A stretch of DNA of 62,922 bases, the filler included, from Octopus bimaculoides (lineage: Eukaryota), in assembly GCF_001194135.2 (NCBI RefSeq). It is 10 parts of 8 records of this genome, joined end to end, with 100 filler letters (N's around TTAATTAATTAA, not from the genome) between each part and the next. Parts side by side here need not be neighbours in the genome. Positions count along the whole stretch, not along the records: positions 55,730 to 59,266 come from NC_068982.1; 9 more parts are not named here. The stretch is one strand, 5' to 3'. A program made the position numbers and the translations under genes. The notes below the pieces were generated by a model, which was not told the origin of the DNA, searched no databases, and was given only the letters and a program-made list of their open reading frames with translations. This document shows, piece by piece, positions 57,611 through 57,804 of the stretch. Numbering within the stretch: the first letter of the stretch is position 1; every line of letters starts with the position of its first letter.

Positions 57611-57731
57611 GTCTTACGGCCATATCACGTTGAAAACACCGGTTCTCGTCTGATCACCGAAGTTAAGCAACGTCGATACTAGTTAGTACTTAGATGTGTG
57701 ACCACTTGGGAAACCTAGGTGCTGTAGACAT
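57611..57731 (+). pseudogene. full-length 5S rRNA-derived sequence
   Basis: GTCTTACGGCCATATCACGTTGAAAACACCGGTTCTCGTCTGATCACCGAAGTTAAGCAACGTCG...TAGTACT...GGGAAACCTAGGTGCTGTAGAC is colinear with metazoan 5S; ends pair as helix I; no oligo-dT terminator; single copy rather than array. Confidence 0.93.
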
Positions 57732-57804
57732 CTATTAAATGAGGCTGTGTTCCAGCATGGCCGCAGTCAAATGACTGAAACAAGTAAAAGAATAAAACAA
57801 AAAA
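57611..57804 (+). mobile_element. 5S-head + SINE-tail composite (candidate SINE3 or chimeric retrocopy)
   Basis: An 11-nt linker after the 5S is followed by ggctgtgttccagcatggccgcagtcaaatgactgaaacaagtaaaagaataaaacaaaaaa, the family B tail. Confidence 0.75.

What the first reader, a model, noticed from the sequence alone, without database searches (positions are those of the whole stretch)
57611..57804. 5S rRNA head fused to the SINE/LINE 3' tail: candidate cephalopod SINE3
Seen: a complete ~121-nt 5S sequence has no TTTT terminator and continues through an 11-nt linker into the family B tail (stem-loop CAGTCA-aa-TGACTG) and an A-rich end. No tRNA head or B body is present, and I find no clear TSD. 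Established: 5S-derived SINEs (SINE3) are rare compared with tRNA SINEs, use the type 1 internal pol III promoter and borrow a LINE 3' end; chimeric retrocopies also form by RT template switching. Inference: either a 5S-SINE family that I do not know to be described in octopus, or a single 5S/SINE chimera. In both cases the probable motor is the LINE type at 40871-41365.
Basis: partly seen in the sequence, partly recalled or inferred. Interest (0 to 1): 0.78.

Follow-up and report, generated by a model that had tools for sequence, protein, structure and literature searches.

The report
Old, near-unique 5S–SINE chimeric retrocopy
A decayed full-length copy of 5S ribosomal RNA is fused to the last ~65 bases of this genome's commonest SINE; it is an ancient, silent relic present once in this genome, with a few sibling copies in related species, and not a sizeable new SINE family.

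Summary
Rfam finds a full-length 5S rRNA at 57612-57730 (91.8 bits). It has no T-run and runs through about 12 nt into the two-hairpin 3' tail of a SINE present about 1.6-2x10^5 times per genome. No tRNA head and no target-site duplication are found.

The junction is not a family in this genome. In three raw-read runs (about 0.47x on the flanks of the two measured) only 4 reads carry this copy's own letter at 57727. The one contig over the junction has single-copy depth, and at 80% likeness only one contig crosses 57735.

The element is old and unconstrained. Two related species keep the same junction at the orthologous locus. It diverges there (4-5%) as much as the flanks (about 5%). RNA-seq shows no reads on the flanks, and no 5S read carries this copy's private letters.

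Related species hold 1-3 other contigs with the same junction at 82-87% identity. One reaches about 28x depth in one species.

Best reading: a template-switch 5S/SINE chimera that was copied a few times, an abortive SINE3, and is now dead. It fails SINEBase's criterion of at least 100 copies. An O. vulgaris repeat annotation already lists four uncharacterised 'SINE 5S' consensus families. Interest is modest.

The parts
57612..57730 (+). 5S rRNA-derived head: full length and decayed. Six positions are private against at least 91% of the genome's 5S-like reads (57651, 57677, 57678, 57697, 57704, 57727). Three of them fall in or next to the IE and box C region.
   Evidence: Rfam RF00001, 91.8 bits, model positions 1-120. 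Read letters. Two of the six are CpG transitions.
57731..57733 (+). Short trailer (with 57730: 'ATCT') shared with other 5S-like copies. It marks the probable end of the 5S-derived RNA.
   Evidence: Many single-copy 5S-like contigs stay alike up to 57733 and then diverge. The loose end of the major gene reads 'AGCATCACACACTTTT'.
57734..57742 (+). Junction or 'linker', possibly the last letters of the SINE body (ATTAAATGA against the canonical ..GACTAA|A).
   Evidence: Loose-end consensus before the tail. A few tail-side contigs reach left to 57736-57741. The alignment is not significant alone. Nine of 12 linker letters are kept in the sibling 'variant 2'.
57743..57797 (+). 3' tail shared with a SINE of about 1.6-2x10^5 copies. 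It has two hairpins, 57743-57762 and 57764-57777. The private letters are 57746 T, 57750 T and 57792 A.
   Evidence: Read depth and variant letters. Fold of -16.5 kcal/mol.
57798..57806 (+). A-rich end (CAAAAAAGA). Likeness to the repeat family fades here.
   Evidence: Depth falls from about 18,000 to about 1,000 to about 27 across 57792-57810 (X21).

Best explanation
This is a dead member of a tiny, ancient lineage of 5S rRNA / SINE-tail chimeric retrocopies, an abortive SINE3.

Inferred origin: a LINE reverse transcriptase primed on the 3' tail of an RNA of the dominant SINE. It copied about 55-65 nt, then switched template to the 3' end of a 5S rRNA (or its short-trailer precursor) and copied it to its 5' end.

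The product carried the 5S internal type-1 pol III promoter, no terminator, and a tail the LINE recognises. It could therefore be transcribed and retroposed, and this happened only a few times. That would explain the handful of loci sharing the same junction.

Shown here: the anatomy, the copy numbers, the age (older than the split from two related species), neutral decay, and the lack of expression. Inferred: the template switch, the retroposition of the siblings, and the loss of promoter function through substitutions in IE and box C.
For: - Anatomy: a full-length 5S joined in the same orientation to a 5'-truncated SINE 3' end, with no T-run between them.
- Near-unique in this genome: only 0, 3 and 1 reads in three raw-read runs (about 0.47x on the flanks of the two measured) carry the window's G at 57727. 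The X1 contig 57642-57750 has depth 8.8 against 6.6 on the flanks. Only one contig (50.1 in X7, 54.1 in X9, which is single-copy depth) crosses 57735 at 80% likeness. The exact junction words were indexed for one sample only.
- Ancient: orthologous contigs in species C (1065 nt, covering 57300-58098) and D (476 nt) contain the element with the same junction.
- Neutral: 4 and 3 differences in 75 nt across the junction, against 43 in about 790 nt and 22 in about 480 nt overall.
- Copied as a unit: 'variant 2' (57733 deleted, 57736 A, 57739 T, so 9 of 12 linker letters kept) occurs in B, C and D at 0.75x, 28x and 1.5x depth. Further crossing contigs have unrelated sequence beyond 57797 or 57762.
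- Silent: RNA depth on the flanks is zero. All 5S RNA reads carry the gene letters at 57677 and 57678 bar one, and nearly all at 57697.
- Precedent: HaSE3 is interpreted as a template switch from a tRNA-SINE RNA to 5S rRNA. Human chimeric retrogenes show a preference for switching to small RNAs.
Against: - No TSD is found.
- No sibling copy is seen in this genome itself, although the siblings look old enough to be shared.
- I never saw the sibling sequences, only mismatch counts and a few variant letters. Their 5' ends and flanks are therefore poorly known, and duplication at the DNA level is not excluded.
- The about 28x variant in species C could be a tandem or segmental amplification rather than retroposition.
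- The RNA-seq libraries are ordinary cDNA libraries and would miss short pol III transcripts.
- The partner LINE was not seen.
Confidence: 0.5

Rival explanations
1. It is a genuine SINE3 family, sizeable or recently active. This copy would be an old member, and my read-based counts would miss most members because they are too diverged or differ at the junction.
For: Species C has a junction contig at about 28x depth and a second one, 146 nt long, at similar depth. An O. vulgaris annotation lists four 'SINE 5S' consensus families covering 9.8 Mb. The genome holds about 2,300 5S-like copies, many of them dispersed in unique contigs.
Against: At 80% likeness only one contig crosses the junction in this genome, 1-2 in B and 3 in D. 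5S-like depth is only about 1% of tail depth. The dispersed 5S-like copies diverge from the window at 57726 or 57733 into mutually unlike sequence, not into the tail. In the annotation, the 7 'recent 5S insertions' cover 42 kb, about 6 kb each, which looks like 5S rDNA arrays rather than SINEs.
Confidence: 0.15
2. It is a one-off chimera, and the other junction-sharing loci arose by DNA-level duplication (segmental or tandem). The chimera itself was never retroposed.
For: Copy numbers are tiny. The one amplified variant (28x in C) sits at a depth similar to minor 5S-like arrays in the same run (190-330). No TSD is found.
Against: The left unique flank 57381-57596 is single-copy in C and D even at 80% likeness, although 3 or more contigs cross the junction there. 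Contigs carrying siblings (883 nt, 302 nt and 245 nt) stop being alike at the element's edges.
Confidence: 0.15
3. It is a split SINE. The SINE fragment at about 57222-57371 and the tail at 57734-57806 would be one old SINE copy, into which a segment of about 360 bp ending in a 5S pseudogene was inserted. The 5S/tail junction would then be an insertion scar.
For: The upstream fragment is 3'-truncated, which is unusual. A few contigs elsewhere join sequence like 57351-57371 to the tail, seemingly in the same order, with unlisted letters between them.
Against: Sequence after 57371 shows no likeness to the canonical pre-tail sequence (score 8, below the shuffle mean). The contigs that join the two parts are single loci, about what chance adjacency of two abundant repeats would give (my estimate). 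Siblings share the 5S/tail junction without the 231-bp unique stretch. As I recall it, that SINE family has a different 3' end; this rests on memory and was not tested.
Confidence: 0.08
4. Two independent events: a 5'-truncated SINE copy happened to insert directly behind an older 5S retro-pseudogene.
For: The tail is so common (about one per 15 kb) and 5S-like copies so many that rare chance adjacencies are expected. Other 5S/tail adjacencies at other positions do exist (joints).
Against: The same junction, with 9 of 12 linker letters kept, recurs at other loci in three species. The 5S ends exactly where other 5S-like copies end. The expected number of adjacencies this exact is well below one (my estimate).
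Confidence: 0.07

Closest known systems
HaSE3 of Helicoverpa armigera (a 5S rRNA-derived SINE sharing body and tail with the tRNA-SINE HaSE1; RTE partner)
   Same: A 5S head is fused to the 3' region of a resident tRNA-derived SINE. It is far rarer than the donor SINE, and some copies lack TSDs. Its authors interpret it as a template switch from SINE RNA to 5S rRNA.
   Different: HaSE3 keeps the donor's body as well as its tail. It is a demonstrable multi-copy family spread over several genera, with near-identical young copies. Here only about 55-65 nt of the donor is kept, and there are one to a few loci per genome.
SINE3 of zebrafish and other 5S-derived SINEs (fish, fruit bats, springhare, Tribolium, Lepidoptera)
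   Same: A 5S head with a type-1 internal promoter, no terminator after the head, and a LINE-type 3' end.
   Different: Those are families of hundreds to many thousands of copies. This one fails the copy-number criterion, and its promoter region carries private substitutions.
Chimeric retrogenes made by reverse-transcriptase template switching (U6, 5S or other small RNAs fused to L1, Alu or mRNA 3' ends; Buzdin et al. 2003, cited)
   Same: A full-length small pol III RNA forms the 5' part and a 5'-truncated retroelement 3' end forms the 3' part. They lie in the same orientation with a direct junction.
   Different: Those are one-off L1-driven events flanked by TSDs and ending in poly(A). Here no TSD is seen, the tail is a structured 'stringent'-type tail, and the junction recurs at a few loci.
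'SINE 5S' class in the 2026 Octopus vulgaris repeat annotation (4 consensus families, 9.83 Mb)
   Same: It carries the same label, and probably comes from the same genus or a close relative. It shows that 5S-headed repeats have already been flagged in octopus.
   Different: That is an automated or curated class label with no described architecture. Its 7 'recent insertions' average about 6 kb, which suggests 5S rDNA arrays. Whether any consensus has this head-tail junction is unknown.

Membership tests
SINE (SINEBase definition), class SINE3 | At least 60% identity to 5S rRNA over at least 60 nt | tested here: met
   Rfam 5S_rRNA at 91.8 bits over the full model. About 92-95% identity to the genome's own 5S letters.
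SINE (SINEBase definition), class SINE3 | [quoted passage not shown] | tested here: not met
   One contig crosses the junction in this genome at 80% likeness. Only 4 matching reads were found in three raw-read runs, about 0.47x each on the two measured flanks. At 57736 the depth is about 1.3x in B, 3.6x in D and 32x in C.
SINE (SINEBase definition), class SINE3 | Short (<1 kb), interspersed, not tandem | tested here: inconclusive
   The element is about 195 bp. A few sibling contigs have unrelated sequence beyond the element. The arrangement of the 28x variant in C is unknown.
SINE (SINEBase definition), class SINE3 | 3' end shared with a partner LINE | not testable with these tools
   The tail is shared with a SINE of about 10^5 copies. 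No LINE lies in the piece, and no octopus assembly or repeat library is on hand.
SINE (SINEBase definition), class SINE3 | Pol III transcription of head plus tail from the internal promoter | tested here: inconclusive
   There is no terminator before 57858. No RNA reads come from this copy or its flanks, but the libraries are ordinary cDNA RNA-seq.
SINE (SINEBase definition), class SINE3 | Copies share diagnostic changes with a source gene and not with the cellular 5S gene | not testable with these tools
   Sibling sequences could not be retrieved; only mismatch counts were available.
Template-switch chimeric retrocopy | 5' part is a full-length small pol III RNA ending at its own 3' end; 3' part is a 5'-truncated retroelement 3' end in the same orientation | tested here: met
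Template-switch chimeric retrocopy | The whole chimera is flanked by one TSD | tested here: not met
   The best flank match does not differ from shuffles. The age of the element and RTE-type integration (an assumption) could explain the absence.
Template-switch chimeric retrocopy | Unique junction (a one-off event) | tested here: inconclusive
   The junction is unique in this genome, but the same junction occurs at other loci in B, C and D.
Functional 5S rRNA gene | T-run terminator just after the gene, intact ICR, and expression | tested here: not met
   There is no T-run for 128 nt. Private substitutions fall at +66/+67, +86 and +93. Of roughly 170-330 RNA reads per site, none carries this copy's letters at 57677, one at 57678 and three at 57697.

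The most novel reading that the evidence does not exclude
The locus belongs to a real but nascent or abortive SINE3 lineage of octopods. It would have been born when the dominant SINE's RNA and 5S rRNA were recombined by a LINE reverse transcriptase. It stayed at 1-4 loci in most species but is amplifying (about 30-60 copies) in one. That would be a SINE caught between 'chimeric pseudogene' and 'family', and the first characterised 5S-headed SINE in molluscs.
Probability: 0.25. Interest if true: 0.5.

Novelty: new member of a known kind. Interest (0 to 1): 0.3.

Why it matters
New SINE heads are thought to arise through template-switch chimeras between resident SINE or LINE RNAs and small pol III RNAs. 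Examples caught at very low copy number are seldom documented. This locus and its few siblings give a dated case, older than the split of at least three species, in a genome where SINEs are a major component of the repeats. If the about 28x variant in one species proves to consist of dispersed retrocopies, it would allow a comparison of a failed lineage and a succeeding lineage of the same chimera. Otherwise this is an ordinary decaying retro-pseudogene with no sign of function.

Tried and rejected
- Indexed search for RNA runs holding the junction found none.
- A 48-nt stretch centred on the junction laid nothing in any run, not even the genome's own contigs. I treat this as a technical null, at most consistent with a single copy.
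- Two scans of JGI metagenome contigs, one for the junction pattern and one for the tail alone, gave 0 hits. That collection therefore holds no DNA of this animal.
- I translated the open frame across the junction (49 aa) and searched the protein collection, hoping for spurious ORFs called on sibling copies. No candidate was found.
- A full-text search for the tail sequence in papers gave 0 hits.
- SINEBase supplements are not held.
- The TSD search found nothing.
- ORFs of the piece are 6 short frames that look meaningless, and were not pursued.
- Summed contig depth was rejected as a copy-number measure inside repeats. It exceeds raw-read estimates 5-6 fold (searches compared).
- The claim that the linker is clearly SINE-derived was rejected, because the alignment is not significant on its own.

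Full report
**What is there.** The piece 55730-59266 was read directly. Rfam's 5S_rRNA model matches 57612-57730 on the + strand over its full length, at 91.8 bits against a gathering score of 38, with E 9.5e-20. ARAGORN finds no tRNA anywhere in the piece. No T>=4 run follows the 5S; the first lies at 57858-57862. After about 12 nt comes GGCTGTGTTCCAGCATGGCCGCAGTCAAATGACTGAAACAAGTAAAAGA. This folds into two hairpins, 57743-57762 and 57764-57777, and is followed by an A-rich end. The two flanks share no direct repeat beyond chance: score 12 against a shuffle mean of 11.8, with 273 of 500 shuffles reaching it.

**What the two halves are.** Raw genomic reads of the same species (runs X21 and X22) give a flank depth averaging about 0.47, my mean over the flank bins. 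They pile up to about 1,000 on the 5S part and to 77,000-94,000 on 57757-77.
- That corresponds to about 2,300 5S-like copies and about 1.6-2x10^5 tail copies per genome.
- In other copies the tail is preceded by '...GGGGTCGATTTGTTCGACTAAAGGCGGTGC' or by '...CTTCAAGGTGGTGCC' (loose ends). It is therefore the common 3' end of more than one abundant SINE.
- The window's 'linker' resembles 'TCGACTAA' in 6 of 8 letters. This is suggestive but not significant alone.

The genome's own 5S letters differ from the window at several positions.
- At least 91% of reads differ at 57651, 57677, 57678, 57697, 57704 and 57727.
- About half of reads differ at four more positions.
- Two of the six are CpG transitions. 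Three fall at about +66/67, +86 and +93, which is the IE and box C region of the type-1 promoter. That mapping rests on my knowledge of the Xenopus ICR and was not tested here.
- Many single-copy 5S-like contigs remain alike to 57726 or 57733 and then diverge into mutually unlike sequence. The 5S-derived part therefore probably ends at 57733.

**Is the junction repeated?** In this genome it is not.
- At 88% likeness or more, depth falls from about 250 (5S side) and about 40,000 (tail side) to 10-15 at 57735-37. Almost all of that is spill-over: of the reads reaching 57727, only 0, 3 and 1 in three runs carry the window's G.
- In the 2015 run X1, the contig covering 57642-57750 has depth 8.8, against 6.6 for both flanks.
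- At 80% likeness, a single contig of single-copy depth (50.1 in X7, 54.1 in X9) crosses 57735. The eight longest pieces per run are all 5S-only.
- The index of 31-mers lists only runs of sample S1 for the junction stretch, each at 0.00 share.
- A 48-nt stretch laid nothing at all. I treat this as a technical null.

**Age and constraint.** Runs of related species were laid at 80% likeness.
- Species C has one 1065-nt contig of single-copy depth covering 57300-58098.
- Species D has a 476-nt contig covering 57300-57786.
- Across 57696-57770 these differ from the window by 4 and 3 letters with no gaps. That is 4-5%, the same as over the whole alignment (43 letters in about 790, and 22 in about 480).
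- The chimera therefore predates these species splits and evolves like its flanks.

**Siblings.** The same runs hold other contigs that cross the junction at 82-87% identity.
- In C: a 146-nt contig (depth 211, about 28x) and a 302-nt contig.
- In D: contigs of 149, 129 and 245 nt, each about 1x.
- In B: an 883-nt contig.
- One type, 'variant 2', keeps 9 of 12 linker letters (57733 deleted, 57736 A, 57739 T). It occurs in B, C and D at 0.75x, 28x and 1.5x depth.
- Total depth at 57736 is 1x in A, 1.3x in B, 32x in C and 3.6x in D.
- Where these contigs extend beyond the element, they stop resembling the window. The unique left flank is single-copy in C and D.
- The junction was therefore copied as a unit, probably to unrelated sites, but only a few times.

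**Expression.** Three RNA-seq runs of about 1.8 Gb sampled each, plus one set of RNA contigs, give zero depth on both unique flanks. At 57677 every 5S RNA read carries the gene letter, not the window's; 57678 has one exception and 57697 has three. No junction reads were listed. These libraries would miss short pol III RNAs, so the result speaks mainly against read-through or host-gene transcription.

**Interpretation.** The architecture is the one expected from template switching of a LINE reverse transcriptase. The 5' part is a full-length small pol III RNA. The 3' part is a 5'-truncated retroelement 3' end.
- The same model was proposed for the 5S-SINE HaSE3, which shares its 3' region with a tRNA-SINE.
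- It was also proposed for human chimeric retrogenes.
- Recurrence of the junction shows some further copying, which makes this an abortive SINE3 rather than a pure one-off.
- It fails SINEBase's criterion of at least 100 copies.
- Rivals are a larger family that my counts under-estimate, DNA-level duplication only, a split SINE (the upstream fragment at about 57222-57371 plus this tail), and two independent insertions. Each is weighed in its own section.

**Prior art.** No paper in the library describes a 5S-headed SINE in cephalopods or holds the tail sequence. However, the 2026 O. vulgaris repeat annotation lists a 'SINE 5S' class with 4 consensus families and 9.83 Mb. Seven 'recent' insertions total 42 kb, which looks more like 5S rDNA arrays. 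Repbase and Dfam could not be consulted.

**Limits.** I recall the tail sequence as that of an abundant Octopus SINE (untested), and the literature describes octopus genomes as SINE-rich. I never saw sibling sequences, only counts and a few variant letters. Summed contig depths inside repeats overshoot raw-read estimates 5-6 fold and were not used for copy number.

Noticed in passing
window 57222-57380: A fragment of a second abundant SINE-like repeat lies 230 bp upstream. By my reading it lies on the same strand as the element; this was not tested. Its core at 57327-57353 reaches about 1,500x single-copy contig depth and is present in RNA. It is 3'-truncated near 57371. A few contigs elsewhere join such sequence to the tail at 57752-57764.
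   Followed up: partly
elsewhere in the genome (joints 57721-57733 -> 57613/57614): Head-to-tail 5S-5S joints with spacers of only 6-18 nt (for example TAGTAAACAAGT, CTCAAG, AATTTACTTCTCTGATGT) occur at single-copy depth in several species. They may be 5S-5S chimeric retrocopies or mini-arrays.
   Followed up: no
genome-wide 5S-like copies: The genome holds about 2,300 5S-like copies. Their 3' flanks are heterogeneous (loose-end agreement only about 0.5; the commonest is 'AGCATCACACACTTTT'). Dozens are single-copy 5S-like sequences inside unique contigs of 0.5-5 kb, so there are many dispersed 5S pseudogenes besides any arrays.
   Followed up: partly
window 57733-57737: In runs X7 and X9 (same species, another study) the only contig crossing the junction has 57734 deleted, 57736 G and 57737 C. 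This is either a three-change allele of this locus or a second locus. A window-identical contig was not seen there, and no run outside sample S1 was listed as holding the exact junction words.
   Followed up: partly
window 57381-57596 in species B (run X14): The left unique flank has zero depth in species B, although the right flank is present on a 1483-nt contig. It could be a deletion, a rearrangement or an empty site. It could also be that 20% of that run was not read.
   Followed up: no
window 57399, 57521, 57914 and about 57300-57696: Several indels separate individuals and species. C and D lack 7 nt at 57399. X9 and X13 lack 6 nt at 57521. C and D have GGC inserted at 57914. A further net deficit of about 20 nt in C and D lies somewhere in 57300-57696 and could not be placed.
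   Followed up: partly
window 55730-55757 and 59208-59266; 58002-58055: A (TA)n microsatellite and a (CA)n microsatellite sit at the two edges of the piece. An A-rich low-complexity stretch at 58002-58055 has raised depth.
   Followed up: no
literature (PMC13282606): The O. vulgaris annotation assigns 9.83 Mb to 'SINE 5S' (4 consensus families). This is far more than the number of 5S-like copies seen here would give as SINEs, so the class may largely be 5S rDNA or mis-assigned shared tails.
   Followed up: partly
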